Both the position numbers and the translations under genes were made by a program. DNA of 64,000 bases from the IMG/VR virus record IMGVR_UViG_3300037110_000087, positions 62,001 through 126,000 of that record; one strand, 5' to 3'. Under the pieces are notes generated by a model, which saw only the letters and a list, made by a program, of their open reading frames with translations, did no database searches and was not told the origin of the DNA. Every line of letters starts with the position of its first letter. Within the stretch, counting starts at the first letter, position 1. Shown here in pieces: positions 1 to 59,629 of the stretch.

Positions 1-1662
1 TATGTACCACAGCAATACACTTCCATCACCAATATTCAAGTAGTGACGATGACCAACAACCTCCCAGTCACTATGGGAGTGATTATCACCTGTGAGAACG
101 ACAACACCCTATCGGCTCCTCTAGCTAATGTAAATGTTTCCAAATCCGGGAACATTGAAGCCATTTATGATATGAGAGAACAGAGAATTCTGTTCGAGAA
201 AGAATCCAGTGATATCATTTATGAGGACTTCCATAATCCTCTTAATTTCGACCCAATTGAATCAAAATTTTCTGGTCGTGGACTAGAGAATGGAACCTGG
301 ATGAGTAGACCTTTCAAACTAGCTGCGGGAACTTATAGAATCGTCCTTTCTTTCGATGCTTATGATAATAATAGGCCACCTCAGTTCTATAATAACTTCT
401 TCACTTATGATATCACAAATACCCTGCATCAAAACCCTCAAACAGTAACTGGGGTCATTGGTGATGTTTACTTCGTTGAAATTGGTACCTTTTCAACTGA
501 TCCCGCTGGAGACTTAAACACCACTAGATTGATACTTCAGTGGGGAGATAATAACGCTTGGGTGATTCAGTCAGATATCAGTGGTAATAATTTCAGCTGG
601 TCTAATGGAATCGGAGCACCTGCTATTGGAATCACTTCAGGTGTCTATTACTTGGATACCGCCAATGTCAATTATTGGACTTTCAACAATGGAGCTTGGG
701 TAGAGATCTATAATTCAGCTACCGACAATGTGATTGATTCCTGTCGTGTGGGATATCGTGAGAATTTCTCTTCTCTTTCCCAGTTCAATCAAGAGGTCAC
801 AGCCGGATCCTATCAGTTGGGACCCACTAAACGAATTTACAGTTTCACCCTTACCCCGCAGGATGTTAATACTAATCTGCCTATTCCTGCTGATTGGTAC
901 CAATTTGTGGTATTAGTGCAGGGTGGTACCAGAGTTAGTGGTCTTTGGTTTGATACTAGTGTAGATGAAACAGCTATGCTAGCCGATTTGTCCTTATTGA
1001 AGAGCCAAATGGCCTTATTATCCAAACAGCAAGGGCCGGTGGGACCTCAGGGGCCGGTGGGTCCCGAAGGACCGGCAGGAGTGGGGCCAGCGGGGCCAGC
1101 GGGGCCAGCGGGGCCAGCGGGAACACCTGGAGATACAGGACCGGCAGGACCGGCAGGAGCACCAGGGCCAACCGGCGCGACCGGAGCAACGGGCGCAACG
1201 GGCGCGACCGGAGCAACGGGCGCAACGGGCGCTAATGCTGTCCCTTCTAGTCCCTGGTTGGCAGGTACTCTCGGACCTACTGCTGGATATTTCCCATTGA
1301 GCGTCAACGCTCTTGCTAGCTCCAATTTCCCTGATTTCTTCACCATTGGCACACAGACACTAACCGCGCTTCAACCCTGCACGGTCATGGTTAACTATCA
1401 ATGCGGAGTATACGGTGCAAACAACAGTTATGGCACAACTGCGTCGGTCCTCATTAATGGAACAGCTAGCCCCTTCGATAGTCAAGCGTATGCACTGTAT
1501 GGTCAGGACTTTGGTGAATCAAATATCTGGTCTAATACTCAGGTTATAATTCCTTGCGCCCAGGGTACAGTTTTAGCCTTCAAACAAGTGAATGCTTTTA
1601 GCCCATCGTACAATTTGGGACAGCGCATCAACATTGTTATTTTGAGTTCGTCCGCAAGTTAA
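1..1662 (+). CDS. Collagen-repeat virion structural/fibre protein, 5'-truncated by the window edge
   Basis: Frame is open from base 1 ([15 protein letters not shown] precedes the listed GTG at 43); about 22 Gly-X-Y triplets; G-x-GAP...YYLDT module shared with other fibre genes. Confidence 0.75.
1033..1230 (+). repeat. Collagen-encoding tandem repeats (9-bp gggccagcg units; 27-bp ggcgcgaccggagcaacgggcgcaacg x2)
   Basis: Seen directly in the sequence. Confidence 0.9.
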
Positions 1663-8308: not shown

Positions 8309-8862
8309 ATGTCCCCCTGGTTGACACTTTTCATTCTCCAAATTACTTCTTCAAGATTTTTACCTTTATAAACAACTGCATTGGGATGATAAAAATCTTC
8401 GTTGTTAGGATGCAGAGGCAGAATTGCCAGACCAAGTGGGTGATTATTAAGCCATCCAATCACATAATCAGGCCAATCATCCACTAGAATATGACCCTGG
8501 GCCTTACTCTTATCATGAGTGATTGTGACTCCAGTCTTGGGGCAGTGCTGGTTGCACCACATCAGTTTTTCTGCCCAGGCACCGGGCTTAGTCTGAGGTC
8601 CTTTGGATAGGATGGACCGATTCATTCCAAGATTCTCTGCTGCTTCAAAGATATCCCATCCAAGCTTGAATTTCTCCAACTTCACCCACCATCCTAATTG
8701 AGAAGTAATGGTATGTCTTCTCTGATCTAGATACTCAGGCATTTCATAATAAAGCGACTCAAAATCTGGTTCAAAAGGGGAGGCTAATCTCTTTAGGTCT
8801 ACTTTGAGTGCCTTATCATAATCGACAAGAGTTCCGTCTAGATCAAATAGAATATCTACCAT
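8305..8862 (-). CDS. HAD-superfamily 5'(3')-nucleotidase-like protein
   Basis: ILFDLDGTL motif I; ILVDD motif IV; K-x-x-W-C-x-x-H segment. Confidence 0.85.
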   Translation of the reverse strand: MVDILFDLDGTLVDYDKALKVDLKRLASPFEPDFESLYYEMPEYLDQRRHTITSQLGWWVKLEKFKLGWDIFEAAENLGMNRSILSKGPQTKPGAWAEKLMWCNQHCPKTGVTITHDKSKAQGHILVDDWPDYVIGWLNNHPLGLAILPLHPNNEDFYHPNAVVYKGKNLEEVIWRMKSVNQGDI

Positions 8863-10208
8863 TAGATCATTCCATCATCGTCGGCTCTACCCTTCTTAGC
8901 ACGACGCTTTTCGAGTTCAGCGGCCTGTTCCAAAGCAATTACTTCTTCAGGACTAACAACATCAGCAACACCTGTGGTCTGGACGACACCAAGGATCTCT
9001 AACTGAGCAACAGTAAGACTGCCACCCCAAGCCGCTCCGGTGAATAACTGCTTGACGAACACTTCCCACATGTTCTTTTCACGCAGGACCTGTCCCATGT
9101 CGTCCTTCATGTACTTGCGGGTGGTGTTGAGATCAGGGCGACCAATAATCTCTAATTCATACCAAGCTCCATTCTGCTTGATCTGGCCAGTAACTAGACC
9201 AAAATTCCACATATCGGACATCTTGGAATAGCCTTTACCCATGATTGACATAATGTCGTACTTACGACCAGTAATATTAGCCCAACGACACTTTCTGGAA
9301 GTGACCTTCATATTGTATTGAGTGAGTTCTTCACCAGCCTCAAGCAGCTGCTCGTCCTTGCCCTCTCTGCTGATCCGGAAATTGCCAGAAGCATAGAAAT
9401 AAGGAGACTCACCACCCTTGGTAGTTTCAGGAGATCCAAATAGCACCATTGGCTTGAGCCGGGTCTGATTGACCATCAGGGTGACAGCACCAACCTTATT
9501 ATTCACTACTACGCAAATAGGAAGATATTGGGAGAGCAAACGAGCCAACCAAGCCTGCTGCCCACTCTCGTCTTCAAGCAGCTGCTTGGGAACAAGTAAG
9601 GCAATAGAGTCAATGGCAGTAAACGGAGCGACATATTGATCTAGCAGACCAGCTTCCTCGTGAGCCTTATACCACCCCATAGCAAAGTTCCGGTAATAAT
9701 AGAACCAGTCTTCTCCGTTTTCCGGATAGAACACATTAATCTTGGTAGGGTCAACCCCGCAGCCCTGAACGAAGCCCTCAGTTAAACCACCCTCAGCGTC
9801 ACAGAATACGATTGGGCGGTCTAGAAGTTCTCCATATACTTCCGAACCCCCAGGAAGATAGTTCGGAAGGCTTCCCATGCCCAGCTTACCTAGGCTAGGA
9901 CAATAAAATTGGTTAGCCGCAGCGGCACGATAGCACATCGTAGACTTTCCTGAGCCAGAAGGTCCGAAGAGATGCTGGAGATGCTTAGGTAGGAACCCGC
10001 CATTAAACACAAAATCAAGGAAGATACTACCAGTCCCGAGAGCAGTTGGGATGCGGCCAAAAATTGGTACTAGGTTGCTTTGAAGAGTCCCACCAAGGCC
10101 CTTTTTTGAAACCATTAGAATATCGCCAAAACTGGGCAGATTCTTCTTTTCTTTTAATACAGGCACAGGCAGATCCTGAGCGTCCTTCTTCTTCTTAGCT
10201 TCAGCCAT
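8862..10208 (-). CDS. recA: RecA/UvsX-like recombinase
   Basis: Walker A GPSGSGKST, DAEG, Walker B AIDSIA, NQTR...FGSPETTKGG. Confidence 0.9.
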   Translation of the reverse strand: MAEAKKKKDAQDLPVPVLKEKKNLPSFGDILMVSKKGLGGTLQSNLVPIFGRIPTALGTGSIFLDFVFNGGFLPKHLQHLFGPSGSGKSTMCYRAAAANQFYCPSLGKLGMGSLPNYLPGGSEVYGELLDRPIVFCDAEGGLTEGFVQGCGVDPTKINVFYPENGEDWFYYYRNFAMGWYKAHEEAGLLDQYVAPFTAIDSIALLVPKQLLEDESGQQAWLARLLSQYLPICVVVNNKVGAVTLMVNQTRLKPMVLFGSPETTKGGESPYFYASGNFRISREGKDEQLLEAGEELTQYNMKVTSRKCRWANITGRKYDIMSIMGKGYSKMSDMWNFGLVTGQIKQNGAWYELEIIGRPDLNTTRKYMKDDMGQVLREKNMWEVFVKQLFTGAAWGGSLTVAQLEILGVVQTTGVADVVSPEEVIALEQAAELEKRRAKKGRADDDGMI

Positions 10209-10299: not shown

Positions 10300-10425
10300 A
10301 TGAGAACCAGAAAGAGAATGACCTCCGCAAGAGTTATTTTGATTGCCCTAGGCATACTATGGTGGGTCCTCTCTCTACCCTGGCGACTAGTTAAAAGGAT
10401 ACTTGATGAAATTAAGAATTGCTAA
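10300..10425 (+). CDS. Possible 41-aa single-pass membrane peptide
   Basis: MRTRKRMTSARVILIALGILWWVLSLPWRLVKRILDEIKNC, translated by hand; below the ORF-track cutoff. Confidence 0.3.
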   Translation: MRTRKRMTSARVILIALGILWWVLSLPWRLVKRILDEIKNC

Positions 10426-11437
10426 AATCAAAAGTACCAAGATGGCCTTTATCAGAACAAAAGCTATGGCTCAAGGAGACTTATTTAGAGCCGTTAATAC
10501 CGCTATTAAATACGGAGAAGATTATTCTGAATTGGCAAAGTTTGGTAAGAATGGTGGACAGTTCACAGAAGAAGAGAGAGCCTGCTTAATAGAAGAGATT
10601 CGCGCTCTTACTTCCACCAGGGAGAACATAGGAGAGCTTCAGAACCTACTCCGGGTGGTTGAAACTTCCCCGGCCATTAGTGACTTAGGAATGGTTGGTA
10701 AGGTGGAGAAGGAAGCCGGTAGAGAACTAAAGGTAAAAGATCGTAAGAATTTCCGCAGTAGAGATATGAAGAGAGTCTTCCTTGACATTGATGGAAAAAG
10801 TTACCCAGCTTACTCGGAAGATGCTAGCGGTAAATGGCTTACTCCGTATTTCACAAAAGAAGTAGCGGATCAAGTTGTACGCGACTGGAATACCATTGAT
10901 GAGGAAGGCGGTCATCTTGATTATGATGATGACTCCATTGAGGGTGCATACTATGATGAAGAAAATGGCATCCGGTTCGAAGGTGAAGAATGCTACGTGG
11001 ATGGTGAACTAACAATTCTGTTCCCTATAGGTGAGGGTGAATGGGGTTGGGATATTGATTCTGGTTACGAGCGTAGGGAAAGAAACCCTATTGACTATAA
11101 TAAAATAAAAAATATCAGTGGAGATAAGACCCTCGCTCCGGGTGGAAAGATTCCTGGAATCAAGACAGAAGACGAAGGAAGAGAACTTAGTCCAGAAGAG
11201 CTTGAAATTACTGATTCCGACAAGGATTTCTTGAGAGGCATGGGTATCAAGGGCAAGCGCATCCGGGTCGTGGCAGTTAATGATGTCAATGCAGTACCGG
11301 AAAAATTCAAGCCCAAAGAAACTAAGAAACAACCAGCTGAAGTTGTTGAAGGTCTGGGAATCACTACTAATGGGCCAGCTGCGACCACAGAAGATCTAAT
11401 GACTCCTGTCGAATCAGTAGCGAAGGTGAAGGAATAA
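10403..11437 (+). CDS. Multi-segment protein with weak leader (MKLRIA), acidic central domain and GIKG module; putative virion cargo
   Basis: Basic N-terminus ending RTKA; acidic 'WLTPYFTKEVA...LFPIGEGEWGW' domain; EITDSDKDFLRGMGIKGK module. Confidence 0.7.
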   Translation: MMKLRIAKIKSTKMAFIRTKAMAQGDLFRAVNTAIKYGEDYSELAKFGKNGGQFTEEERACLIEEIRALTSTRENIGELQNLLRVVETSPAISDLGMVGKVEKEAGRELKVKDRKNFRSRDMKRVFLDIDGKSYPAYSEDASGKWLTPYFTKEVADQVVRDWNTIDEEGGHLDYDDDSIEGAYYDEENGIRFEGEECYVDGELTILFPIGEGEWGWDIDSGYERRERNPIDYNKIKNISGDKTLAPGGKIPGIKTEDEGRELSPEELEITDSDKDFLRGMGIKGKRIRVVAVNDVNAVPEKFKPKETKKQPAEVVEGLGITTNGPAATTEDLMTPVESVAKVKE

Positions 11438-11438: not shown

Positions 11439-12644
11439 ATGACGAAAGTTCAGTTCATCCTGAAATGCCGAAGCGGTGGTTATGGGTACGGCGAGTATGA
11501 ATACGACAGCTATGGCGACTATACAGAAGAATATGGCCAACCCTTTCTAGATGAATATGGTGGACCCTATGAGGATCCATATTCTACTTCATACAGTGAT
11601 GTGTATGGAGATTCCTATACCAACACCTACTCTGGATCCTTTAGTTCCGGATTAGCAAACTCTGCTGCTTTCATTGCTGCTGCTTTCAACGATGATCCCT
11701 CTAAAGGAATCCAAGCAGAGGTTTGTTTCGTCCCCGACAATAACTACATCGACAGGGAAGTAGCAAGGTTCCAGCCAGATGTTGTGATCATTGAAGCTTA
11801 TTGGGTCGTTCCTACCAAGTTCGCCGTTCTCACAGCTAAATATCCACGCATCAGGTGGGTGGTAAGGAATCATTCTGAGATACCCTTCATCGCTCAAGAA
11901 GGCGTTGCGATGGATTGGTCCCTGAAGTATCCTAGCTTTCCTAATGTCTATATAGCAAGCAACTCCACTAGATCTTTCAATGACCTCAGTGTTTTAATTA
12001 GCTCTGTCTACCCATCAGAGGCTACTAGAGTTGTCTATCTCCCAAATGTCTACCCAAATGTTACTGTCGGTACCAGAAGCACCAAGGTCGAGGACAACTC
12101 TCTAGATGTAGCCTGTTTCGGGGCTATTCGTCCTCTCAAGAATCATCTAATGCAAGCAGTGGCTTCAATTGCCTTTGCTCAGCAACTTGGCAAGACTTTG
12201 AGATTCCACGTGAACGACTTGGTTAGCGGACCTAATAGCAACGCTATTCTAAAGAACTTAACTTCCCTCTTCAGCCTTATTCCAAATGCTCAATTAGTCC
12301 AACACCCCTGGTATCCTCATGATCAATTTCTATCCGTGTTGAGATCAATGGATATTGGTCTGCAAGTCAGCTTCTCTGAGACTTTCAATGTCGTGAGTGC
12401 GGATATGGCCTACGTGGGTCTACCTATGGTAACTTCTTCGGAAGTCGTATGGGCATACTATCCAATCTGGGCCGATCCAACTGATTGCAAGAGTATTATA
12501 TCCACTATGACCAATATCTGGGCCAGTCGTGCGAACAAGAGAAGCACTGATGTTCTCCCCTTGACTCAGCAGGGCTTAAACAGCTACAGTTCTTCTTCCT
12601 TCAATCAGTGGTTCCTAGAAATAAACAATCTGGCTATGCCTTAA
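11439..12644 (+). CDS. Glycosyltransferase (GT-B/GT4-like) with Tyr-rich N-terminal insert
   Basis: CFGAIRPLKNH; MDIGLQVSFSETFNVVSAD (ExF motif). Confidence 0.8.
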   Translation: MTKVQFILKCRSGGYGYGEYEYDSYGDYTEEYGQPFLDEYGGPYEDPYSTSYSDVYGDSYTNTYSGSFSSGLANSAAFIAAAFNDDPSKGIQAEVCFVPDNNYIDREVARFQPDVVIIEAYWVVPTKFAVLTAKYPRIRWVVRNHSEIPFIAQEGVAMDWSLKYPSFPNVYIASNSTRSFNDLSVLISSVYPSEATRVVYLPNVYPNVTVGTRSTKVEDNSLDVACFGAIRPLKNHLMQAVASIAFAQQLGKTLRFHVNDLVSGPNSNAILKNLTSLFSLIPNAQLVQHPWYPHDQFLSVLRSMDIGLQVSFSETFNVVSADMAYVGLPMVTSSEVVWAYYPIWADPTDCKSIISTMTNIWASRANKRSTDVLPLTQQGLNSYSSSSFNQWFLEINNLAMP

Positions 12645-26074: not shown

Positions 26075-26512
26075 GTGATGAGACAGCTTAGCTTTTACTG
26101 CGGTGACTACCAAGCCGCATTGAAGTATTTTAACGCCAACAATCCAAATTCCCACATGGAGAAGCTCACCCAGGATCTGCAGACCGGCGATCAGATGGTT
26201 GAGGAAACCCGACAATATATAGGATCATTCCTCGACAATACCCTGATTACCTATGGGGCCTTCTGGAACCAGGAAACCAGCCCACTCTATTTGTTCTCCA
26301 ATTGTGAGTTTGTGTTCAACACCCTGCGTCTACTGGTTGCCGAAGGGAAGCTGGATCGAAATCAGGTGAACATCCTCTATTTCGAGGATAAAGATGCCAA
26401 TTCCCCTCACATGGGTCTAATGATCGGGAAGAATGGACAGCTTAACTGCTGGCCCTACGGATTCTTTGATACCATGGGGAAGCTGCTGACACGGCTGATG
26501 GAACTGCGCTAG
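26075..26512 (+). CDS. Stand-alone DUF3696-like domain protein
   Basis: NTLRLLVAEGKL...VNILYF...IGKNGQLNCWPYGFFD...LLTRL. Confidence 0.7.
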   Translation: MMRQLSFYCGDYQAALKYFNANNPNSHMEKLTQDLQTGDQMVEETRQYIGSFLDNTLITYGAFWNQETSPLYLFSNCEFVFNTLRLLVAEGKLDRNQVNILYFEDKDANSPHMGLMIGKNGQLNCWPYGFFDTMGKLLTRLMELR

Positions 26513-28653
26513 CTTCCTATTGGAAATAATTTTACATAAGTCTTTATGTAGCCACTGATATCACTAAGGCCCTCCCACAACCTGTAGGATCCACACTGAA
26601 AATTTACGATCTCTGGATGTTTCTTTAGCCACTGATCCAATTTCGGCCATCTAATCTTATATGTAGCTAGCCAATGGATTCCGGGGATAACAATTTCTGC
26701 AGCGTTATTCTCGTACTTTGAAGGTATTGGTTTAAAATTAAATTGGTTACTAAAGGGATCTAATCGAGATAGCCATAATTTATAACCATCATCTGATGGG
26801 TCAACGTAGTTCAGGAGATGAAGTTTCTCACTTTCTCTGAGTCCGTCATAAGCTTCATTGTAGATTAATCTATATTTTTCCTCTTCATACTGTTGTTTAG
26901 CAAGATCGAATTTAGGAGCGTAACCCAATAAATGTTTCTTCAGATACTCGGTAGAGAATTGGATGGGATCAAACATATCCGCATCATCAAACAATTCAGG
27001 ATAAAATTCATCGGAATCGTTTAAATATCCACTCACAAAATCAAAAACCTTCTTCGTCCCACGAATCAAAGGAACTAATTTATCAAAATCCTTAATCCTG
27101 TTACCCTTGAAATGGTTAATGACACTAAGTATATCACCTATGTGAACCTTCTTCTGAATCAGCAGATCAAGATCCTTTGCTATATAAGATTCATATTCCT
27201 GGCCAGGATAGTCCAAGGGATTCACACTTTGAAGAGTAATCTTTGGTGTCACCCAAGTAGGACCGTTCATTTTTCGCAAGTAAGGAACGCAATTAATCTT
27301 ATTTTGGGCATAATCCATTAATCTTTCGTCACGTACATTTCTACTAGTGGCTACTTCAATCAGGGCGTCTATCATTCCCTTTGCTGCTTTTTGTTTTCTT
27401 ATTTCTAAACATTTATCGAGAACCTCAGGCCAGACATAGCCTGCCTGTTTACAATATTGTCCAATTTTGTCCAATTTTGTATTAGCTCCCCAATCAACAT
27501 AGTCTTTATCAGTTATTGGTATAATGAACCAATTTTGGAACATCTTAGGCTCAATCAACAGTTGTCTCTTCTTGATCTTTCCAGCCTTTAGCATTACCTC
27601 CATCTCTGAAAGAGTCTTGATGGGTATATCTTTCTGGAACTGATCAATATACTGAGCACGAAGATTCGAAGAAGTCTTCTTGATCGCACGTTCAGCTTCG
27701 GGCCAAGCTGCACCAATTACATAAAGGGCATAGCCTGCAGCCCACATACCCTTATTAACAATAGCGGCTTCAACATTAGGATCCCTGGGACCAAAATCTT
27801 CAAACCACCCTCTGATTAGATTTTCCTTATCCATGACCTGAGCATCAAACACCTTTGGTTCAAGTTCTGGATAGCGTCTAATCATAATACGCTCTAGTAC
27901 GCTAGCGATCATGACTACTGACTTAGTACCTAGAATCTTTAGATATTTGTCCGAAGGTTCGACGTAGGGAAGAATCCTCTCACAATAATCAACCATCTCA
28001 GGATCTTTCGTCTTATCCCTTATTTCATGAACTAAGTCATAGACCTGATTATTTTTGAGATGATAACCATCTCTGAAGCTCCGATCCCCACGATCACAGA
28101 ACTGACCTGAATCTGGATGTAACTGGGCGTAGGGTTTCCCATCTCGGTAAAAAATCCATAGGGGTCCATCCTTGAGATAGCTGGCAGCAGTCTTCGTACT
28201 GGCCGCCGTACACCAATTGGTATTTGATCCCAAAACTACCGCAGCCTGAGGGGTTGTTACCCGATAAACAATCCAGGGGTCTTCTTTATATTTAATCTCC
28301 GACCCATTAATGCCTTCGTGAACATTTCGCTTCTCTTGCTTCTTTGAATCACCAAATTCATCCAGAGCTTTAAACAGAGAATTGGGAGTATAGGAACCAA
28401 TGTCTGTACTATGGGATTCTTTAAACTGTGAGTTCTTCAGGCGAGTGAATTTCTCGAGTAGACCACGAATCTTTTCGACATCCTCTGGTATTTTGATATT
28501 TTTTGCTTTAATTTGTTTGACCAGCCAGTCGGTATAATTAGAAGGGGGATCAATCTCATCAGCTTGATCCAAGACCTCTGGACCCACTGAATACTTTCGC
28601 ATCAACAGCTCTTTCTTTCTCTCATTGATAACTGCACTAAACCGGAAGGTCAT
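26509..28653 (-). CDS. Large leader-bearing protein with PcfJ-like TNWCTA domain and WPE-type helical repeats
   Basis: MTFRFSA start; VYRVTTPQAAVVLGSNTNWCTAA; AWPEAERAI and VWPEVL repeats. Confidence 0.65.
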   Translation of the reverse strand: MTFRFSAVINERKKELLMRKYSVGPEVLDQADEIDPPSNYTDWLVKQIKAKNIKIPEDVEKIRGLLEKFTRLKNSQFKESHSTDIGSYTPNSLFKALDEFGDSKKQEKRNVHEGINGSEIKYKEDPWIVYRVTTPQAAVVLGSNTNWCTAASTKTAASYLKDGPLWIFYRDGKPYAQLHPDSGQFCDRGDRSFRDGYHLKNNQVYDLVHEIRDKTKDPEMVDYCERILPYVEPSDKYLKILGTKSVVMIASVLERIMIRRYPELEPKVFDAQVMDKENLIRGWFEDFGPRDPNVEAAIVNKGMWAAGYALYVIGAAWPEAERAIKKTSSNLRAQYIDQFQKDIPIKTLSEMEVMLKAGKIKKRQLLIEPKMFQNWFIIPITDKDYVDWGANTKLDKIGQYCKQAGYVWPEVLDKCLEIRKQKAAKGMIDALIEVATSRNVRDERLMDYAQNKINCVPYLRKMNGPTWVTPKITLQSVNPLDYPGQEYESYIAKDLDLLIQKKVHIGDILSVINHFKGNRIKDFDKLVPLIRGTKKVFDFVSGYLNDSDEFYPELFDDADMFDPIQFSTEYLKKHLLGYAPKFDLAKQQYEEEKYRLIYNEAYDGLRESEKLHLLNYVDPSDDGYKLWLSRLDPFSNQFNFKPIPSKYENNAAEIVIPGIHWLATYKIRWPKLDQWLKKHPEIVNFQCGSYRLWEGLSDISGYIKTYVKLFPIGS

Positions 28654-28662: not shown

Positions 28663-29175
28663 TTAAGATTCCCACATTGGTGTCATAACCTTAGCCCATA
28701 CTGCACCATAAGAATCCTCACTTGACTGGTTGATCCAAGTTTCGTCAATTCCGGGTCCGGTGATTGCAATCTCGTCGGCAAAATCTTCTGTCAAGCATTG
28801 ACTAATGCCAGTCTTCATTTCTTCGATAGAGCTGTAGTCTTCATCCCAACTGCCACCAGAGTCGGTCTGACGGAATTCCACATGATAACTGCCACTCGAT
28901 GTGGGTTCCAGATCTGCTTTCTTCACCTTGTTCTTCAGAGGCTTGACAGCACTCTTGTCATTGCCAGATTTGTTGTCCTTGTTGAACTTGATCTGAGGAT
29001 ACTTTTTGGTCTTGGCCAACAGAGGATCAGAGAATGGGGTTTCCAACTCTGGAGCGCCCACATTTGGTCCATCGATTAGAGGCAGAACGGCACCCTTGTC
29101 GTTGCCAGAATCATTTCTCTTATTGAACACAATAGTTGGATATTTCTTGACAGATTTGAAGTTTAATTTAGACAT
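28663..29175 (-). CDS. Leader/YPTI-module protein with acidic C-terminal domain
   Basis: Two YPxIxFNK..SGNDK.AV.PL modules, then KKA and an acidic domain. Confidence 0.75.
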   Translation of the reverse strand: MSKLNFKSVKKYPTIVFNKRNDSGNDKGAVLPLIDGPNVGAPELETPFSDPLLAKTKKYPQIKFNKDNKSGNDKSAVKPLKNKVKKADLEPTSSGSYHVEFRQTDSGGSWDEDYSSIEEMKTGISQCLTEDFADEIAITGPGIDETWINQSSEDSYGAVWAKVMTPMWES

Positions 29176-29179: not shown

Positions 29180-29686
29180 CTATCCTCTTTTCAATTTTAA
29201 CATTTTGGGCTTTAGTTTTCCTTTGATACCCATTCCTTTCAGGAAATCTTTATCAGCATCAGTGATCTCAGGCAATGGCTCAAGATCCATCAATTGATCT
29301 TTGATCCCCTCCATCATTTTCTGATGTTTCTTGATTCTTTCTTCCCTTTCCTCCCTGGTCGCGAATGTGTTGTTAGCACAGTCTATACAAATGGTTGATT
29401 CACCATCCTCACTCACACAGATTGGATCTTCTTCGGTATCCTTGATTCCACCACCACACCAGTCACAATTAATCACATCGCCCAGACCAGCTTTCTTGGC
29501 TTCCAGCATCTCTTTCAGTTCACCGCCCTGATCCTTCAGTTCTTTCTTGTCTTCTTTCTTGGTCGGATGCTTGAGGAATTTCACCAGTTCCTTATGTTCA
29601 TCAATGGCGTCCTCTAAGGACATCGAGTAAGTGTCATTCTTGATCGTGTCAGATTGCTTGACAAATGCTTTTAAATTAAGTTTCAT
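29180..29686 (-). CDS. Leader-bearing protein with CxxC..CxxC zinc finger and GIKG module
   Basis: Start MKLNLKA at 29686; CDWC...CIDC; EITDADKDFLKGMGIKGK. Confidence 0.75.
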   Translation of the reverse strand: MKLNLKAFVKQSDTIKNDTYSMSLEDAIDEHKELVKFLKHPTKKEDKKELKDQGGELKEMLEAKKAGLGDVINCDWCGGGIKDTEEDPICVSEDGESTICIDCANNTFATREEREERIKKHQKMMEGIKDQLMDLEPLPEITDADKDFLKGMGIKGKLKPKMLKLKRG

Positions 29687-29688: not shown

Positions 29689-31074
29689 TCAGTCCTTTGG
29701 ATCTAGTGTAACATTCAAGACCCATTTCTTTTTGCCAGAATCCCAGATTCGATACCAGCCCTTCTTGGCTGCTTCTTCCTGCTCATTTACACCCGCTGGA
29801 ACTCTGAAGTTGAACTTATGCTTGCGTACCTGTTGTCTCGTGTAGTAATAATCAGGCCCCAGTTCTTTTACACATTCAAAGCCCAGATCTTGATAAAGTT
29901 TCCCAGTATGCAAACGATTATCTGAGAAACTTATTATCTTCTGATATTGATTGAGTTGGAAAATCAAATTAAGTGCTTTCTGATGTGGATTCCAGGTTTT
30001 ATACTGATGGTCGAAACTCGCTCTGGTCCATTCTAGTTCGGCCCCAGGCCGTTTCTTGAAAACCCAAGCTCCGACAACCTTGGATTTATACTTCGCGCAA
30101 ATGTAATGGGTCCCACTACACTGATTATCGCCAAGATAATGGAATTTGCTTAGAAATTCCTTCACATCATTCATATGACAAAATTCATAGGTTGGCTTGA
30201 TACGCTTTTGTGATTTGGGAATTAGTTGATCGATGATAAGCTGCCAATTCTCATCTCCAAAGATCTGGAGCAAACGAATTCCGAACGATTCACATAAGAG
30301 ATGTTTATCATGATCTCTTTTGGGTTCATTCGCTACAGCTTCCGAGTGCCATCTTAATCCTTGATATTCTATCCCAGTTCTAATAGAAGGAATCCAGATG
30401 TCAAGCTCATATGGCTTTATTATGGTTTTGTCTGAAAATAAAGCGTCAGGGAAAGATTTAACAATCAATTCGAAGATCTTGTGAGCGGGGCTTGTATCCG
30501 CCGTCCCTGCAACAACACAACCACAGCTAAGAGTGAACTCCCTCAGCACATCTTTACCAACAATCTCTTTAGAATTCCCACAATCACACAAAAACCGGAA
30601 TTTCTCACCTGTTTTGAGACTGAACTCTCCTTCTGGCAATCGGTCGGGATCGAGTCGTAGCTTACCCCATTTTTCATTCAATATTAAGCGATCAGTAAAG
30701 TTACATCTCCCACAACGATGAACATTACCTCTAACTGCTGTCCGGAATGCTTTTATGGAAGTCCTACCACAATCACAGATGAACTGCACTTTCATAGCAG
30801 ATCCCTGACTCCACTCATCCAGAAGAGGTTGATCTGGATCTAATCTCAGCTCGCCCCATTTTTGTTCGAGCCAATAGCTCTTCGGTTTGTCCTCGCAATG
30901 ACCACAAGATTTTAGTTTTATAACTGCGTAGAACTGTTTGGTCGTTGTTCTACCACAGCTACAAATGAATACAAATTCAGAATGAGATCCTGGACCCCAA
31001 TCGTTGGGAAGGAGCTGATTCGGGTCAAGATGCAGGGTACCAAACTTTGTATTAAGCCATTCTTCGCGCTTCAT
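29689..31074 (-). CDS. Hef-like/very-short-patch PD-(D/E)xK homing endonuclease with three Zn-ribbon repeats and a C-terminal GNAT-like domain
   Basis: 3x K[FW]G.L.LDP...F.C.CG; YELDIWIP...GIEYQGLRWH; SFSDNRL..G.LY..LGF...YRIWDSG. Confidence 0.7.
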   Translation of the reverse strand: MKREEWLNTKFGTLHLDPNQLLPNDWGPGSHSEFVFICSCGRTTTKQFYAVIKLKSCGHCEDKPKSYWLEQKWGELRLDPDQPLLDEWSQGSAMKVQFICDCGRTSIKAFRTAVRGNVHRCGRCNFTDRLILNEKWGKLRLDPDRLPEGEFSLKTGEKFRFLCDCGNSKEIVGKDVLREFTLSCGCVVAGTADTSPAHKIFELIVKSFPDALFSDKTIIKPYELDIWIPSIRTGIEYQGLRWHSEAVANEPKRDHDKHLLCESFGIRLLQIFGDENWQLIIDQLIPKSQKRIKPTYEFCHMNDVKEFLSKFHYLGDNQCSGTHYICAKYKSKVVGAWVFKKRPGAELEWTRASFDHQYKTWNPHQKALNLIFQLNQYQKIISFSDNRLHTGKLYQDLGFECVKELGPDYYYTRQQVRKHKFNFRVPAGVNEQEEAAKKGWYRIWDSGKKKWVLNVTLDPKD

Positions 31075-31153: not shown

Positions 31154-32272
31154 TTAGAGTCTGGTGCCCTTGTTCACGCCGTTCGCGTTAACGATGACGG
31201 GTGCGACGATCTCGCGGATGAGCCAGCCACGTGCGGGGATACCCAGGACGTTCTTGTTGATTGGCTCGCTAACGAGGCCCTGGCGAACCAGGAACTGACC
31301 GAGAGTCTTGGGGTGTGAGAAGAAGTAAATCTCACCGGCCTGGAGGACGCGCAGCTGAGAGTTGATGAATGCGTCAGTGTGCATTGTCACACCAAGCAGA
31401 CTACCAAGCTCACCAGTCAGCACGATTTCATGCTTGGTGACGGGATCAAACCAGGAAGCGAAGGTAGGATCAGCTACCAGATCGTTCATGAGGTTGTTAG
31501 CCATCCAGCAATTGCTCACTGGTAGACCGCGATTCTCAACCTGATTCTTCAAGCTCTGATAGACCGCAGGGGTCAAGCTGGAGAAGAAAGTGGGAACGTT
31601 GAGGGTGGCAGCAGCCTGATCAGCCAGGGTCTTCCACTGGCGGTCTTCCTGCACCATGACCATTTCCATACCGTCCTCAAGCTTCTCTTCAAGAAGATCA
31701 GCACCGAGGCGAGCGAGTTCCTTTTCCTCAATCAGGATGTGTGACTCGATGTAATTCTCACGCAGGTAAAGCTCTCTCTGCTTGATGTGAGATACAGGGG
31801 TCTGGCCATCAGTTGACATCGAGAAAGCAAGGGTATCCTGCTTGCGGATGTAGACTTTGCACTCTTCCTGGACCTTGAGTTCACGTTCCTGAGCGAAACG
31901 GCGAAGGAAACCAGTACGGCTGATTGTGGTGCGGATTTCGTTGGTCACTTCTTCACCGATGGTGCCGAAGTTTGCAGCGGAACGGGTTAAGCTAGCGGTG
32001 CGGATATCAGAGGCTAGCTGATCCAGGGTTTCGCGAGCAGAAGCCTGCTTCTGAATCTGGCCCTTCTGAGCAGCACTAACGATGTTAGCAATCTGCTGGA
32101 AGGCATCACGCTTGTTGTAGGCGTTAATCTCGCCATTGCTGTTTGCGACGGCTTCGTTGGACTGGGAATACCCGCCCTTGGAGGTCACGCCACCAGCTTT
32201 CTGCTCTGAGGCAGGAATGTCGGTACCGGTAAGGGTAGCAACAAACGGGTTTCTTTTTGGTGTTACGGCCAT
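31154..32272 (-). CDS. Major capsid protein (HK97 fold)
   Basis: 372 aa; NGEINAYNKRD, RTGFLRRF, QEDRQW, WFDPVTKHEIVLTGELGSLLG; strong codon bias; followed by a terminator. Confidence 0.8.
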   Translation of the reverse strand: MAVTPKRNPFVATLTGTDIPASEQKAGGVTSKGGYSQSNEAVANSNGEINAYNKRDAFQQIANIVSAAQKGQIQKQASARETLDQLASDIRTASLTRSAANFGTIGEEVTNEIRTTISRTGFLRRFAQERELKVQEECKVYIRKQDTLAFSMSTDGQTPVSHIKQRELYLRENYIESHILIEEKELARLGADLLEEKLEDGMEMVMVQEDRQWKTLADQAAATLNVPTFFSSLTPAVYQSLKNQVENRGLPVSNCWMANNLMNDLVADPTFASWFDPVTKHEIVLTGELGSLLGVTMHTDAFINSQLRVLQAGEIYFFSHPKTLGQFLVRQGLVSEPINKNVLGIPARGWLIREIVAPVIVNANGVNKGTRL

Positions 32273-36403: not shown

Positions 36404-36811
36404 ATTGCGATCTTGATCTGTTCTGGATAAAAGGCAACCCAGGAATCCGCTCGATCATGAGCGGCTTCATATTCATTTCGATAAACTAACCCATCGTAAC
36501 CGTTCATAGTGGCTCTAATCTTGGGGATCAGGCCCTAGATCTTTCACACGTTGAGGGTTTTTGATATTTAAATAGACTGGTATATAGCGAATTCCTTCTT
36601 CTCCGCGAAAATCCAAACGATCGGCATGTTCATCCACCTGTGAGAGAGTACCAAAATGGGCACCCATTTTTGTATCGAATGTACCAAAGTCATGTGAAGT
36701 GACATGATATAGTTTTAAAGGTTTCCCTTTAGAATCAACCACCTTGCTGCCTGAGAACCAGAATGTATCAAGTTCGGCGGTCTTAAGAAAAGCCCTCAGG
36801 GTGAGTTTCAT
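36400..36811 (-). pseudogene. ART-PolyVal-like ADP-ribosyltransferase, leader-bearing, frameshifted
   Basis: MKLTLRA...SKVVDSKGKPLKLYHVT...YIPVYLNIKNP stops at 36515; the expected C-terminus NGYDGLVYRNEYE...SWVAFYPEQIK lies in another frame and ends at 36400. Confidence 0.7.
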
Positions 36812-36812
36812 T

Positions 36813-37202
36813 TTATCCGTCCCTATATTTTTCGCCCAGAGCGTTAAGGGCGAGAAAACCTTTATCTGTGCCTCTCCAATTCTCCCCAGTGAAGGTATCA
36901 ATCAGGAAGACTGTGTTACAAGCACAGTAAGTCTTTAGAAAGTGTTTGACTGCCGCGAAATTAAGGGACAACCTCGGCCCTATTATTTCGAAGACCCCCA
37001 ATCCATCAGTGGAGAGTCTACACCAGCCAGCAGCCTTCATCGTGTCTGCTATGTCACCGAAATCCTTGTAGTCTCTTTTGACAATTTGGTACGCCATATC
37101 ACGATGACCCTCGTAGGCACAAGGTATCATTTCGAGAGTGTTCAAATTGGCCCAGCCACACCCTGATGGTTGTTTGATATTAGCAACCAAATGGAGTTTC
37201 AT
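36813..37202 (-). CDS. Leader-bearing hypothetical protein (GW...GH...GWxR family)
   Basis: MKLHLVA start. Confidence 0.7.
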   Translation of the reverse strand: MKLHLVANIKQPSGCGWANLNTLEMIPCAYEGHRDMAYQIVKRDYKDFGDIADTMKAAGWCRLSTDGLGVFEIIGPRLSLNFAAVKHFLKTYCACNTVFLIDTFTGENWRGTDKGFLALNALGEKYRDG

Positions 37203-37624
37203 TACATATACTCCCCGGTCACCACGTTCATGATTTTCACGTGCTCAAAGATCGCGATGCTTCCGGCCTTGTCGCCTTGGACATAAGCGTCGAAGCCTTT
37301 CTTGCGCAGGGTTTCGAAGAACTCAATCGTCGCGTGGTTCATTTTCTCGTAGTGCTTTTCTCGATCGGCCTCAGTGGCGTGATAAGGATTTCTAACATCG
37401 AGCCAGCAGGTGTATAGTTCCCCTTCTTCTCCAATAAGGTTTGATTGGTACTCTTGATTCTTGGTGAACCAGATACCTTCCGGCTTTCGTTTCAATACAT
37501 TCAATTTCTTGGCCGCGCTACCATGGTACATACGACAGTTAATCTCGGTCTTAGGGAATGGACATTTGGACTGTTTGAATTCAGTCTTGAATCCTTTTCC
37601 CTTCGCAACAAAATGGAGTTTCAT
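37202..37624 (-). CDS. ART-PolyVal-like ADP-ribosyltransferase domain, leader-bearing
   Basis: MYHGS...GIWFT...YTCWLDVRNP...GFDAYV...IAIF. Confidence 0.7.
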   Translation of the reverse strand: MKLHFVAKGKGFKTEFKQSKCPFPKTEINCRMYHGSAAKKLNVLKRKPEGIWFTKNQEYQSNLIGEEGELYTCWLDVRNPYHATEADREKHYEKMNHATIEFFETLRKKGFDAYVQGDKAGSIAIFEHVKIMNVVTGEYM

Positions 37625-38400
37625 TTCTTTCTCCGATAATTAAGCTTCCGACTATACTGGTAGTGATTAGCCTCAATCCAACCCACCACCTTGTCCAGGT
37701 CCGCAGCCTTGAAATAGGGATGACTTTCATCACCCACGTACCACTCGTCGTCATACCCATTCTTTGAGACAGGTACAATATTCCGAGCAGAAGGACCCCA
37801 GAAAATAATCTGCTGCTCTTCATCACCAAAGTGGGAAACTTCGATTCCACTGGCTCGGAAAATAACAGCCTCTGTGCCATACTTGTTGGTCGGATAGTTG
37901 TAATTGATGTCAAAGGCGAAATTGTAACCAATGCCTCGTTTCCTGTTCTTAAACCAAGTGGTCAGACCAAGCTGCTCCATTTCCGCGAAGCCATACTTGA
38001 AACCGTCAGTCGCGATTGCGTAGGGGTCATCACAGAAGTGAATCAACCACCCATCCTTGAACACGCTATCGAATTCCAGATGCATGTAAGAGGGACATTC
38101 TACCGCGTCGTGGTTCATTGCATCATATTGCTTCTCATTGAAGAATTTGACCATGAGCGCATCAGGCATCGAATAGATTGAGTCGTAATTGAAATCCCCG
38201 TCTTCACCAAACAGGGTGATGAATTCACTCACTTCTTCATAAGGTTCTTCTTCTAAAAATTCCGAAAGCAAATGGGGAAAGACACTGGCTAGTTCACGCC
38301 CTTTATCAGCCTCATCCATTTCCAGATAATTCTTAAGATGCACAATTTCTTGGCAAAGGTAAGCCTGTCTGGTGATGTGGGCCTTTAGGTGTAGTCTCAT
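37621..38400 (-). CDS. Leader-bearing protein, possible ART fold
   Basis: MRLHLKA; WLIHF...GYNFAF...KYG...HFGDEEQQIIFW. Confidence 0.5.
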   Translation of the reverse strand: MRLHLKAHITRQAYLCQEIVHLKNYLEMDEADKGRELASVFPHLLSEFLEEEPYEEVSEFITLFGEDGDFNYDSIYSMPDALMVKFFNEKQYDAMNHDAVECPSYMHLEFDSVFKDGWLIHFCDDPYAIATDGFKYGFAEMEQLGLTTWFKNRKRGIGYNFAFDINYNYPTNKYGTEAVIFRASGIEVSHFGDEEQQIIFWGPSARNIVPVSKNGYDDEWYVGDESHPYFKAADLDKVVGWIEANHYQYSRKLNYRRKK

Positions 38401-56034: not shown

Positions 56035-57243
56035 ATGAAACTCCATCTTAAAGCCTTTGTTAAAAAAGCTTATGGTACGGATTACGCCTTTACAACAGGT
56101 GAATCTGTTAAGGTAGATGGGAAGGCGGTTTCCATTTGGTGCATTTTAGTTGTTGATACACCAGACTACATTGGTGGGCGAATGGCCATCAGAAAATGTG
56201 ATCTTGGTCTAGATGAAGATGAACACGAATATTTCGTCATTTTTACAACTAGCAGGAATCTGACCGGCGAAGAAATCGAAGGTGGAATCTATCTTAGAGA
56301 AATGATCGGTGATTGGGATGAAATTTACGAACTCTTGGATTGGAGTGAATGGAGTCCAAGGGACCAGTACAATCTTGGGGAATTTGAATATTTCGAAGAA
56401 ACTGGTGAGTGGCCTGATGCAATGAAACCAGAACTCTCTGAATCAGATATAAAAGAATTAAAGCAATGGGGAATTAAAGGAAGGAATAAAATGGAACTTC
56501 ATCTAGTAGCGACTATTCAGAAGAAACCGATCAAAAAGATATCGGTCCATCGCAAAAAGGGCGCTATTCCTCCTCCAGTTGTTACCCCGACACCTCAACC
56601 GGTTAATCCACCGGCCCAGACTGAAGTAGTGAATCAGAATACACAGACCACGAACACCCAGACTCAGGCTCCTCCTCCTAAGTGGATGGAAAATCCCTGC
56701 TACAATCCTCTATACATTGGTGATACTGGACAATCAGCTGCTTCGCCAGAGAAGGCTGAAGCAGCCGCCAAGGATAGATTGGCTAAGGGTATTATTGACC
56801 AATTTCATAAACAGAAATATTCCTTTAGTGAACAAATAATTGGGGCATGGGTTAAGAAATGGAGCAAGATCGGAATTGAAGGCGTTGATGGTCACTTCCA
56901 AGATCAGGGTTGGAATCGTGCCTGGGCAACGCTGGATGCTAGACAGTATGGCGATTTGGCCAAATATGTTAGAGATCACCCAACTGGTGAACAGAATGGG
57001 CAAAATCTCCAGCAGAACAACAACCAGACTACCCAGAACAACAACCAGAATTCCAAGAATATCGTGTATGATAAGACCCAGACCAAGACTTCTGATAAGG
57101 GGCCTCTGGCACCAGGATTCCTTCCTGATGGTCATTATCCATCAAAACAGGATCTGCTGAAGCAGTTTCCGAATGTACAAAATGACGATAGTTTAGCACG
57201 ACGCCAATATGATCTAGCAAGACACCAACAGCCACAAGGATAA
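56035..57243 (+). CDS. Leader-bearing two-part protein (second leader at 56491) with Pro- and Gln/Asn-rich segments
   Basis: MKLHLKAFVKKA; GIKG module; internal MELHLVA. Confidence 0.75.
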   Translation: MKLHLKAFVKKAYGTDYAFTTGESVKVDGKAVSIWCILVVDTPDYIGGRMAIRKCDLGLDEDEHEYFVIFTTSRNLTGEEIEGGIYLREMIGDWDEIYELLDWSEWSPRDQYNLGEFEYFEETGEWPDAMKPELSESDIKELKQWGIKGRNKMELHLVATIQKKPIKKISVHRKKGAIPPPVVTPTPQPVNPPAQTEVVNQNTQTTNTQTQAPPPKWMENPCYNPLYIGDTGQSAASPEKAEAAAKDRLAKGIIDQFHKQKYSFSEQIIGAWVKKWSKIGIEGVDGHFQDQGWNRAWATLDARQYGDLAKYVRDHPTGEQNGQNLQQNNNQTTQNNNQNSKNIVYDKTQTKTSDKGPLAPGFLPDGHYPSKQDLLKQFPNVQNDDSLARRQYDLARHQQPQG

Positions 57244-58311: not shown

Positions 58312-59181
58312 ATGACGAAGCTAAAATTCAAAGCAAAGAAAACCAAGAAATACCCTACTATTACCTTTCACAAGGATAACAAGTCAGGCAATGACAAGAG
58401 TGCTGTCAAGCCTCTGAAGAAAAAGGCTTCACCTACCTCCATTCTCTTTGTGGATGAGATTGAAGGTGTACTACACGAACATATTATCAACTGTGAAGCT
58501 ACTGCTCCTCCTGAGGAGATCCTTAGGGCAGTTGATATGGCATGCTTCGAGGGAGATGAAGAAGCACTCAATGAGAGTGGGCCACTCCGCCTAGTCTCTG
58601 ATACCACAATTGATGGTAATCGCGTTATCGAAGCTTGTTTTGGTGATAGAAATCATCAGGCTTGGATTGCAATTGGTCCTACTGCCAAAAGGGCTATCAC
58701 TAAAGCTTCTGATATGGATTTTGAAGCATCCGTCAAGACCGCTCTCAAACCAACCGAAGTGAAAATGAATCCGGGTTCCGAGAAGGGTCCCAAGGGCGAA
58801 CAGAACAAGGAGACTGTTGCTCAGAAGCCAATTATCACAGTCGAACCGGGCGAGAAAGATAAGGTAGAAAAGAAAGCTGCTGGAGAATGGGGTCCCGGTT
58901 CGGGAGCGATTTCCGGATCCTTGGCAGACAGGCTCAATCAGGCGAAAGCTTTCCCTGAGCGAATAAGCAGGGGTAAGTTCGAGCTTTGCAAATTCACTGA
59001 TGAAGTAGATCCCAGCACACAATGCTATGAAAATGACGGTCCTTGCGTTGGTTTCGAGGGTTGTGAGCTTTATCTTGATGATCATCCAGAAGGGTCTGAC
59101 AGAGGTGGTTATGTCGTTTTCTGCGAACTGAATGGGGAAACTGCTCATTTCGATGAAGGCATGGGTGACTGGGTGGACTAA
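58312..59181 (+). CDS. Leader/YPTI-module polyprotein-like protein with two acidic segments
   Basis: One YPTI module and one KTAL..KGP module; SD AGGAGG. Confidence 0.75.
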   Translation: MTKLKFKAKKTKKYPTITFHKDNKSGNDKSAVKPLKKKASPTSILFVDEIEGVLHEHIINCEATAPPEEILRAVDMACFEGDEEALNESGPLRLVSDTTIDGNRVIEACFGDRNHQAWIAIGPTAKRAITKASDMDFEASVKTALKPTEVKMNPGSEKGPKGEQNKETVAQKPIITVEPGEKDKVEKKAAGEWGPGSGAISGSLADRLNQAKAFPERISRGKFELCKFTDEVDPSTQCYENDGPCVGFEGCELYLDDHPEGSDRGGYVVFCELNGETAHFDEGMGDWVD

Positions 59182-59188: not shown

Positions 59189-59629
59189 ATGAAGCTCCAT
59201 CTGGTCGCTAATATCAGGAAAGCAATCATCACCCAGCATACAGACCTGGGTGGTGAACCCATGAGTCCTATCATGGAAGCCATCTATTGGTGCCTGATCT
59301 TCAATATTGAGCGTTTTGTATCAGTTAGGGAACAAAAACAAGAATGGAATGGGTTCAAAAGCATTGTTCCCAATCCTGATGAAAAGCCAACTCGTAAGAT
59401 GATTGGGAATGAAAAACCCCTCTCCTACCTCATGGTCAAATATTATTGGAAAGCGTTGAAACTCGATCGAGTTTTAGATCAGGAGATCAAGGATCATTAT
59501 CTTTTTGAGATTGATGCAGATTCTGAAGAGGAACTTATTGCTAGATTCGATCAAATCCTACAAATGATTGAAGGTCATGTCTGGGATCTTATCCTCGCCA
59601 GAAAAAAGGCCGACGATTTAAAACCCTAG
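59189..59629 (+). CDS. Leader-bearing hypothetical protein
   Basis: Start moved to MKLHLVANIRKA, just after the upstream stop. Confidence 0.7.
   Translation: MKLHLVANIRKAIITQHTDLGGEPMSPIMEAIYWCLIFNIERFVSVREQKQEWNGFKSIVPNPDEKPTRKMIGNEKPLSYLMVKYYWKALKLDRVLDQEIKDHYLFEIDADSEEELIARFDQILQMIEGHVWDLILARKKADDLKP

What the first reader, a model, noticed from the sequence alone, without database searches (positions are those of the whole stretch)
11204..11275. Third shared module: E[IL][TS]xxDxxxLxx[MW]GIKG, always followed by a leader-like strand
EITDSDKDFLRGMGIKGK-RIRVVA (11204-11275), EITDADKDFLKGMGIKGK-LKPKMLKLK (about 29187-29270, minus) and ELSESDIKELKQWGIKGR-NKMELHLVA (56431-56511) occur in three otherwise unrelated genes up to 45 kb apart. 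Each copy closes an acidic payload and precedes a leader-like segment, suggesting a conserved linker or docking helix at cargo junctions.
Basis: partly seen in the sequence, partly recalled or inferred. Interest (0 to 1): 0.6.

Follow-up and report, generated by a model that had tools for sequence, protein, structure and literature searches.

The report
Conserved C-terminal helix tag in jumbo phage
A 17-residue peptide motif that ends otherwise unrelated accessory proteins of an uncultured 307-kb phage is real, under protein-level selection and shared with other large uncultured phages; it looks like a small docking helix (an address tag), but what it binds is not known.

Summary
The motif sits at window 11204-11254 (+), 29219-29269 (-) and 56431-56481 (+). 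The 307-kb virus genome holds exactly five copies; chance predicts about 0.02 for the six-residue core. Identical residues often use different codons, so selection acts on the protein. A profile search and a DNA-pattern scan gave 31 non-redundant copies in uncultured large phages, up to seven per genome. They lie either 3-12 residues from a C-terminus or between domains of 500-1900-aa proteins. The invariant core is D-[KR]-x-hydrophobic-L-[KR]-x-M-G-[IV]-[KQ]-[GA] followed by basic residues. It reads as a self-capped three-turn helix ending in a hydrophobic-Gly-hydrophobic-Lys anchor.

"Always followed by a leader-like strand" is true only for the copy at 56431. The firmer link is that four of the five carriers begin with an N-terminal tag, MKLHLKAFVKK-like, found on about 21 genes here, some with ART-PolyVal domains.

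In four other phage contigs the motif-rich protein lies just upstream of the head protease and major capsid genes. My best reading (about 0.4) is a docking tag that loads accessory modules into the head. The main rival is a proteolytic processing junction. No structural or co-folding test gave a usable answer.

The parts
10406..11437 (+). Gene A (343 aa). It has a degenerate N-terminal leader, an acidic body (pI 4.8, with a phrog_9945 match at residues 139-223), the motif, and a 59-aa tail.
   Evidence: The ortholog P0089 (58% identity) has the same layout, so the internal position of the motif is not an assembly error.
11204..11254 (+). Motif copy A (internal, 60 residues before the stop).
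   Evidence: (41.7 bits)
29180..29686 (-). Gene B (168 aa). It has an N-terminal leader (29654-29686), a Cys4 zinc-ribbon-like body, and the motif 12 residues before the stop. It lies two genes downstream of the major capsid gene.
29219..29269 (-). Motif copy B (C-terminal).
   Evidence: (44.3 bits)
56035..57243 (+). Gene C (402 aa), which reads as two modules fused in frame. Module 1 has a leader (56035-56067), an acidic body and the motif. Module 2 starts with a second leader and is a basic, Q/N/T-rich body.
56431..56481 (+). Motif copy C (internal, W in place of M).
   Evidence: (33.9 bits)
56491..56523 (+). Internal leader-like strand of C, three residues after the motif. This is the only motif copy truly followed by a leader.
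   Evidence: 25.4; 19.5 with this copy left out of the matrix
36515..38400 (-). Cluster of four small genes. Three start with the leader (36515-36811, 36813-37202, 37621-38400). Two match ART-PolyVal (36515-36811 over the Pfam cut-off; 37202-37624 below it).
59189..59629 (+). Leader-bearing gene (146 aa) at the end of the C gene cluster.
31154..32272 (-). Major capsid protein (context only), used as the test partner.

Best explanation
The motif is a short, self-contained recognition element. It is a three-turn amphipathic helix with its own caps, followed by a hydrophobic-Gly-hydrophobic-Lys/Gln-small anchor and a basic tail. The N-cap is T/S/N-x-x-D. The C-cap is a Gly, with the following Ile packing back onto the invariant Leu. 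The element sits at the C-terminal edge of diverse accessory modules, after a flexible acidic or Pro-containing linker. I infer that it docks each module onto one common partner. The most likely partner is a component of the assembling head (shell interior, scaffold/core or protease), so that the modules are loaded into the virion. In this phage it works alongside a separate N-terminal tag (MKLHLKAFVKK-like). Shown here: the motif, its conservation, its placement and its gene context. Inferred only: the helical reading, the binding, and the partner.
For: (1) Across 31 non-redundant copies specific residues are fixed: D(-7) in 31/31, L(-3) 30/31, M(0) 28/31, G(+1) 28/31, I/V(+2) 31/31, K/Q(+3) 26/31, G/A(+4) 28/31, T/N/S(-10) 23/31, with K/R enriched at +5 to +7. 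Such fixed identities fit a specific protein contact better than a mere linker. (2) At least seven copies lie 3-12 residues from a natural C-terminus (B, D, E, P0088, P0093, the second copy of P0084, L010 ORF1). The rest lie between domains of proteins of 500-1900 aa. (3) The motif stays nearly identical between A and a 58% ortholog while both flanks change. (4) Gene context. In four IMG/VR contigs the motif-rich protein lies 0-3 genes upstream of a head-maturation-protease homolog and 6-7 kb upstream of the capsid homolog, on the same strand. In this genome B is two genes from the capsid gene. D lies in the same-strand run of genes that holds terminase, portal and protease. Three leader-only genes lie between terminase and portal. 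(5) Four of five motif carriers bear the leader, which occurs on about 21 of 422 genes (hypergeometric p about 2e-5). Leader genes include ART-PolyVal domains, a class predicted to be packaged (PMC5512222). T4 Alt, also an ADP-ribosyltransferase, has propeptides at both ends (PMC9026906). (6) The anchor M-G-I-K plus a basic tail has the two features described as decisive for encapsulin targeting peptides: two hydrophobic residues separated by Gly, and a Lys near the C-terminus (PMC7925596).
Against: There is no direct evidence of binding or of virion location. Co-folding with the capsid protein scored 0.00, which the tool counts as no answer. Gene A sits next to a RecA-like gene and E sits in an accessory cluster, not in structural blocks. 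In two close relatives the region downstream of the capsid gene lacks B. Cultured relative PaBG has no copy, so no proteome can be consulted. Two tags on one protein for one purpose would be redundant. The helix reading comes from sequence rules only; the AF2 model of D had pLDDT 33.7.
Confidence: 0.4

Rival explanations
1. Processing junction. The motif marks the sites where a phage protease, either the head maturation protease or a polyvalent-type metallopeptidase, cuts multi-module precursors into separate modules. This could occur alongside a targeting role, as with T4 propeptides.
For: There are several copies between domains of giant proteins. Modules are fused in some phages and separate in others, with the gene break 3-12 residues after the motif. 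The motif ends in a small residue followed by basic residues. A head maturation protease is present (phrog_18299) and lies directly downstream of the motif protein in contig G004. Virion proteins of PaBG are cut at multiple sites (PMC7412058). There is a weak MPTase-PolyVal match in an 842-aa protein.
Against: Many copies lie 3-6 residues from a natural stop, where cutting achieves nothing. The conserved stretch is a 17-residue helix, longer than usual protease subsites. The Glu before the helix, a possible Glu-specific site, is present in only 12 of 31 copies. The protease class could not be established: Pfam S77 and S78 were not found, and the fold attempt failed.
Confidence: 0.2
2. The motif is a recognition peptide for a partner outside the head. 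Candidates are a host protein hijacked by injected or early effectors, the cell membrane (a C-terminal amphipathic, basic helix), or nucleic acid.
For: The carriers are accessory, fast-evolving, mostly acidic proteins. A and E lie among non-structural genes. The motif is an amphipathic helix with a Lys/Arg tail. From memory only, and not tested, it resembles the C-terminal membrane-targeting helix of MinD.
Against: Strict identity of D, L, M, G and I is more than membrane binding needs. The motif proteins recur next to the protease and capsid genes in four contigs.
Confidence: 0.15
3. Head-to-tail docking between modules. The C-terminal helix of one module binds the N-terminal strand of the next, as docking domains do in modular synthetases, so that fused and unfused arrays are equivalent.
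For: Motif-stop-leader junctions occur in L010, L014 and after B, and there is a fused motif-leader junction in C.
Against: There are about 21 leaders but only 5 motifs in this genome. The motif is common in phages that lack the leader altogether: 125 kb of foreign loci hold only one leader hit. D and E are not followed by a leader gene.
Confidence: 0.1
4. Plain paralogy. The five genes descend from one gene and only the termini stayed recognisable; the motif is a structural end-piece with no separate role.
For: The carriers share both an N-terminal and a C-terminal element.
Against: The middles differ in length (about 100-260 aa) and composition and give no BLAST match at E 1e-3. The motif occurs without the leader and several times per protein in other phages.
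Confidence: 0.05

Closest known systems
T4 capsid targeting sequences (propeptides of IPI-III and Alt)
   Same: Both are short conserved terminal peptides on otherwise diverse, fast-evolving accessory proteins. In T4 they include an ADP-ribosyltransferase, and Alt carries propeptides at both ends (PMC9026906). The genes sit in or near the head module.
   Different: The T4 tag is N-terminal, 10-19 residues long, and removed by gp21 after Glu. This motif is C-terminal or internal and has no sequence likeness to the T4 tag. A preceding Glu is present in only 12 of 31 copies. Neither packaging nor cleavage is shown.
Encapsulin C-terminal targeting peptides (family 1)
   Same: Both are C-terminal and follow a flexible linker. 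Both have an anchor of two hydrophobic residues separated by Gly plus a nearby Lys/Arg. The encapsulin partner is an HK97-fold shell (PMC7925596), and this phage's capsid protein matched a solved major capsid protein.
   Different: Here the anchor is preceded by a strictly conserved capped helix. Copies also occur internally and several times per protein. The GSL element of encapsulin peptides is absent. Co-folding with the capsid protein gave no answer.
Polyvalent proteins of phages (Iyer et al. 2017)
   Same: Both involve giant multi-domain phage proteins and ART-PolyVal domains in the same genome. For polyvalent proteins, packaging and proteolytic release of domains have been predicted (PMC5512222).
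   Different: The motif proteins themselves carry none of the typical polyvalent Pfam domains. A repeated junction motif of this kind did not turn up in that paper's passages on cleavage and packaging or in a string search of the literature.
Prp-cleaved N-terminal extension of L27 and of phage 80alpha capsid and scaffold (relevant to the leader, not the motif)
   Same: Both are N-terminal, about 10 residues long, with an M-x-L-x-L start, a Lys pair after it, and occurrence on several phage proteins.
   Different: The defining (D/N)LQ(F/L)F'A is not kept. No Prp gene is present in the phage.

Membership tests
T4-type capsid targeting sequence | N-terminal propeptide of 10-19 residues | tested here: not met
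   The motif is C-terminal or internal in all 31 copies.
T4-type capsid targeting sequence | Removed by the prohead protease after Glu ([LI]-x-E) | tested here: inconclusive
   Glu precedes the helix in 12 of 31 copies and P3 is not consistent. Protease specificity is unknown.
T4-type capsid targeting sequence | Directs the protein into the prohead core | not testable with these tools
   This needs virion proteomics or reporter fusions.
Encapsulin targeting peptide | C-terminal peptide with hydrophobic-Gly-hydrophobic and a terminal Lys/Arg | tested here: met
   M-G-[IV] is present in 28-31 of 31 copies, with K/R enriched at +3 and +5 to +7, compared with the description in PMC7925596. Only at least seven copies are truly C-terminal.
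Encapsulin targeting peptide | Binds the inner face of an HK97-fold shell protein | tested here: inconclusive
   Complex prediction with the capsid protein scored 0.00, which the tool reports as 'no answer'.
Prp-cleaved L27-type leader (for the 'leader-like strand') | MLxx(D/N)LQ(F/L)F'A(S/H)KK with a Prp protease present | tested here: not met
   Leader positions 6-8 are K/I/V, A, F/N/T/R, with no Q. PF04327 is absent from the phage.
Polyvalent protein | Several Pfam PolyVal-type effector domains in one polypeptide | tested here: not met
   The motif proteins gave no such domains. ART-PolyVal is found in leader genes, not in motif genes.
Helix-hairpin-helix motif | G-hydrophobic-G hairpin followed by a second helix | tested here: not met
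   The first Gly (-1) is present in only 14 of 31 copies, and many copies end 3-5 residues after the hairpin.
Any Pfam or PHROG family | Profile match over the motif | tested here: not met
   There is no Pfam family for A, B, C or E at E 0.01. D was not scanned. Among A, B and C, only phrog_9945 matches, in the body of A and not over the motif.

The most novel reading that the evidence does not exclude
A group of uncultured jumbo phages uses a modular two-tag address system to load a changing set of accessory or effector modules into the capsid. The tags are an N-terminal strand and a C-terminal capped helix ending in an encapsulin-like hydrophobic-Gly-hydrophobic-Lys anchor. The anchor would bind the inner face of the HK97-fold shell or its core. 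That would be a phage counterpart of encapsulin cargo loading, and a portable tag for packaging foreign proteins.
Probability: 0.25. Interest if true: 0.8.

Novelty: new variant of a known kind. Interest (0 to 1): 0.55.

Why it matters
How large phages choose which proteins travel inside the head is known in detail only for T4 and partly for phiKZ-like phages. A short, sharply defined peptide shared by many unrelated modules gives a concrete handle on that question. It predicts which accessory proteins belong to one pathway. It can be tested with a single reporter fusion or peptide pull-down. If it is a loading tag, it links phage capsids and encapsulins mechanistically and offers a packaging tag. 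If it is a cleavage junction instead, it defines the specificity of an uncharacterised head protease family.

Tried and rejected
- **Co-folding.** The motif peptide (alignment A4) with the major capsid protein (alignment A3) scored 0.00. The verdict was 'no answer', so it counts neither for nor against binding.
- **AF2 models.** Motif protein D folded from a single sequence gave pLDDT 33.7, which is unusable. The head protease with six homologs gave pLDDT 32.0, so no fold search was run. A profile of the protease against PDB sequences gave nothing.
- **ESM Atlas.** Look-ups for B (motif part) and A found no usable neighbours. The Atlas's own models are poor, with pLDDT 0.59 and 0.41.
- **Word-based protein searches.** B found only itself. 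A found only itself and P0089. These searches cannot see relatives that share only the termini.
- **The search for related loci.** The capsid protein found no close relative. The five-copy motif alignment gave 92 pattern hits, consistent with my own rough estimate of chance, and none was confirmed.
- **Cultured phages.** tblastn of the motif against the collection gave no match, and a whole-record search of PaBG gave none.
- **Sequencing runs.** The in-frame fusion in C could not be checked against reads.
- **Protease families in the genome.** Prp (PF04327), S77 (PF03420) and S78 (PF04586) were absent.
- **DNA-level repeat or regulatory cassette.** Rejected, because of the synonymous differences and the lack of conserved upstream DNA.
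- **Other motif classes.** Helix-hairpin-helix was tested against the position table and not met. EF-hand/dockerin, adenain-type (M/I/L)XGX-G sites and clamp- or SSB-tail-like peptides were compared by eye only. None fits the invariant positions.
- **The 968-aa and 514-aa neighbours as tail sheath.** Not supported by BLAST against the PaBG sheath.

Full report
**What the window is.** The window is bases 62001-126000 of a single 307,124-bp virus record with 45% G+C and no tRNA in the window. The major capsid protein (31154-32272, -) matches phrog_2522. It is 28-33% identical to those of PaBG, phiRSL1, Erwinia and Vibrio jumbo phages. The closest metagenomic relatives reach 72-73%. Elsewhere in the genome I located:
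- terminase large subunit at 140836-143196;
- portal at 144852-146888;
- a head maturation protease (phrog_18299) at 147505-148212.

**The observation.** All three peptides are present. The genome holds exactly five copies:
- A: window 10406-11437, motif internal;
- B: window 29180-29686, minus strand, motif 12 residues from the stop;
- C: window 56035-57243, motif internal;
- D: genome 157929-158339, five residues from the stop;
- E: genome 228113-228700, minus strand, four residues from the stop.

A profile built from 19 copies separates the five (32-44 bits) from everything else (at most 8.7 bits). A and B share 16 of 18 residues, 9 of them with different codons. The DNA outside the motif does not align. 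This is selection on a peptide, not a DNA repeat.

- Only C is followed by a true leader-like strand: score 19.5 on a matrix built without it, p about 0.003. The tails of A and B are not leader-like, and D and E simply end.
- The real regularity concerns the carriers' own N-termini. B, C, D and E begin with M-K-L-H-L-[KIV]-A-x-[VI]-K-K, and A has a stretched version.
- This tag scores at or above threshold 23 times in the genome against 0 in a reversed-sequence control, almost always at an ATG. Synonymous codons vary and there is no shared upstream DNA.
- With about 21 tagged genes out of 422, four of five motif carriers being tagged has p about 2e-5.
- Several tagged genes match ART-PolyVal: 36515-36811 and genome 28377-29729 over the Pfam cut-off, two more below it.
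- C therefore reads as two modules fused in frame: leader-body-motif, then leader-body.
- The bodies show no mutual similarity. Four of five are acidic.

**The motif outside this genome.** A profile search of 1.84 billion representative proteins gave 13 hits. Five were this phage's own B, C, D and E plus P0089, the ortholog of A. Two were unrelated repeats. The rest were informative:
- P0088 (120 aa) has both the leader and a C-terminal motif.
- P0093 (366 aa) has a C-terminal motif.
- P0084 (963 aa) has two copies, one at the very end.
- P0092 (523 aa) has two copies, P0094 (1245 aa) three and P0095 (1892 aa) four.

Loci around these proteins added more copies. In L010 a gene ends with a variant motif, and nine bases later P0088 starts with the leader. 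In L014, P0093 ends with the motif and overlaps a leader gene, followed by another leader-plus-motif gene.

A degenerate DNA pattern found five IMG/VR contigs of 57-210 kb. Whole-record searches found 2-7 copies in 1-3 genes per record. PaBG has none, and neither do the capsid neighbourhoods of two close relatives. The leader is confined to this phage and near kin; the motif is broader.

**Anatomy.** From 31 non-redundant copies, numbering from the Met:

| Position | Residue | Count (of 31) |
|---|---|---|
| -11 | hydrophobic (F/I/L) | 22 |
| -10 | T/N/S | 23 |
| -9 | D/E | 21 |
| -7 | D | 31 |
| -6 | K/R | 28 |
| -4 | hydrophobic | 26 |
| -3 | L | 30 |
| -2 | K/R | 25 |
| 0 | M | 28 |
| +1 | G | 28 |
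| +2 | I/V | 31 |
| +3 | K/Q | 26 |
| +4 | G/A | 28 |
| +5 to +7 | K/R-rich | not counted |

A Pro often lies 2-4 residues upstream. By the established helix-capping rules (my knowledge, not a tool result), T/S/N-x-x-D is an N-capping box. L-x-x-M-G-I is a Schellman-type C-cap in which the residue after Gly packs onto the residue three before the cap. The motif thus reads as an autonomous three-turn helix with one hydrophobic face, ending in a hydrophobic-Gly-hydrophobic-Lys anchor and a basic tail. The low-confidence AF2 model of D also drew a helix there, but that model cannot be relied on.

Between A and its 58% ortholog the motif is nearly unchanged, while the upstream linker diverges and an eight-residue indel follows it.

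**Context.**
- In contigs G001, G003, G004 and G005 the main motif protein lies 0-3 genes upstream of a homolog of the head maturation protease and 6-7 kb upstream of the capsid homolog, on the same strand. In G004 the protease starts 32 bases after the motif protein's stop.
- P0084 follows a 1211-aa protein homologous to window 51488-54394, the same relative place as C and its two neighbours here. So modules that are separate genes here are fused there.
- In this genome B is two genes from the capsid gene, with an HNH homing endonuclease between them. D lies in the same-strand run of genes that holds terminase, portal and protease. Three leader-only genes lie between terminase and portal.
- A and E are in accessory regions.

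**Interpretation.** The fixed residue identities, the terminal or inter-domain placement, the flexible flanks, the multiple copies and the head-module context fit a docking peptide that attaches varied modules to one partner during head assembly. Published analogues:
- T4 propeptides target internal proteins and the Alt ADP-ribosyltransferase to the core. Alt is processed at both ends (PMC9026906).
- Encapsulin targeting peptides bind through two hydrophobic residues separated by Gly plus a terminal Lys (PMC7925596).
- Polyvalent phage proteins are predicted to be packaged and cut (PMC5512222).

I give this reading about 0.4. A processing junction is the main rival (about 0.2) and could coexist with targeting. 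Virion proteins of PaBG are cut at several sites (PMC7412058). However, copies a few residues from a stop, and the weak conservation of the preceding Glu, argue against cleavage as the sole role. Other partners (host factor, membrane), module-to-module docking and plain paralogy are less likely, for the reasons given under the rivals.

**Limits.**
- No structure prediction reached usable confidence.
- The single co-folding job gave no answer.
- No cultured carrier exists, so virion location is inference.
- A literature string search found no mention of the motif or the leader.

Noticed in passing
window 28663-29175 (-), 57247-58302 (+), 58312-59181 (+); genome 25776-26168: A second shared module of about 27 residues (K-K-Y-P-T-I-V/T-F-N/H-K-x-N-x-S-G-N-D-K-x-A-V-x-P-L-K-K) occurs once or twice in four proteins. 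Each copy follows a short basic leader-like N-terminus, and two of these genes directly follow motif genes B and C.
   Followed up: partly
window 26509-28653 (-); genome 158500-160737, 218919-224858: A six-member paralog family shares an N-terminal domain of about 200 aa (30-42% identity) and has no Pfam match. One member follows B (after one gene), one follows D (after one gene), and four lie 3-9 kb from E.
   Followed up: partly
window 29689-31074 (-): An HNH homing endonuclease (phrog_559) is inserted between the capsid gene and B, with a 57%-identical paralog at genome 21356-22801. Relatives carry GIY-YIG or DUF7487 endonucleases at the same place, so the region downstream of the capsid gene is a variable insertion site.
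   Followed up: partly
genome 143663-144415 (outside the window): Three tandem small genes (83, 93 and 69 aa), each starting with the leader, lie between the terminase and portal genes.
   Followed up: partly
window 11439-12644 (+): This 401-aa protein has a Tyr/Gly/Asp/Glu-rich low-complexity N-terminus. It lies directly after gene A and has a 51%-identical paralog at genome 234715-235833, near the E cluster. It has no Pfam or PHROG match.
   Followed up: no
window 61392-61826 (+): This 144-aa ORF has a 42-residue stretch 43% identical to residues 130-171 of the major capsid protein. A second such fragment lies at genome 43122-43454.
   Followed up: no
genome 191713-194241 (outside the window): This 842-aa protein has a weak MPTase-PolyVal match (E 0.003) and an ART-like stretch shared with leader genes. 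It is a candidate polyvalent protein.
   Followed up: no
window 43-1662, 43066-44808 (-), 47875-50646: Three large proteins carry collagen-like repeats and match tail-fibre PHROGs. Window 21946-23991 matches a head-decoration family.
   Followed up: no
window 8862-10208 (-), 38932-40197 (-): A RecA-like recombinase and a PhoH-like ATPase.
   Followed up: no
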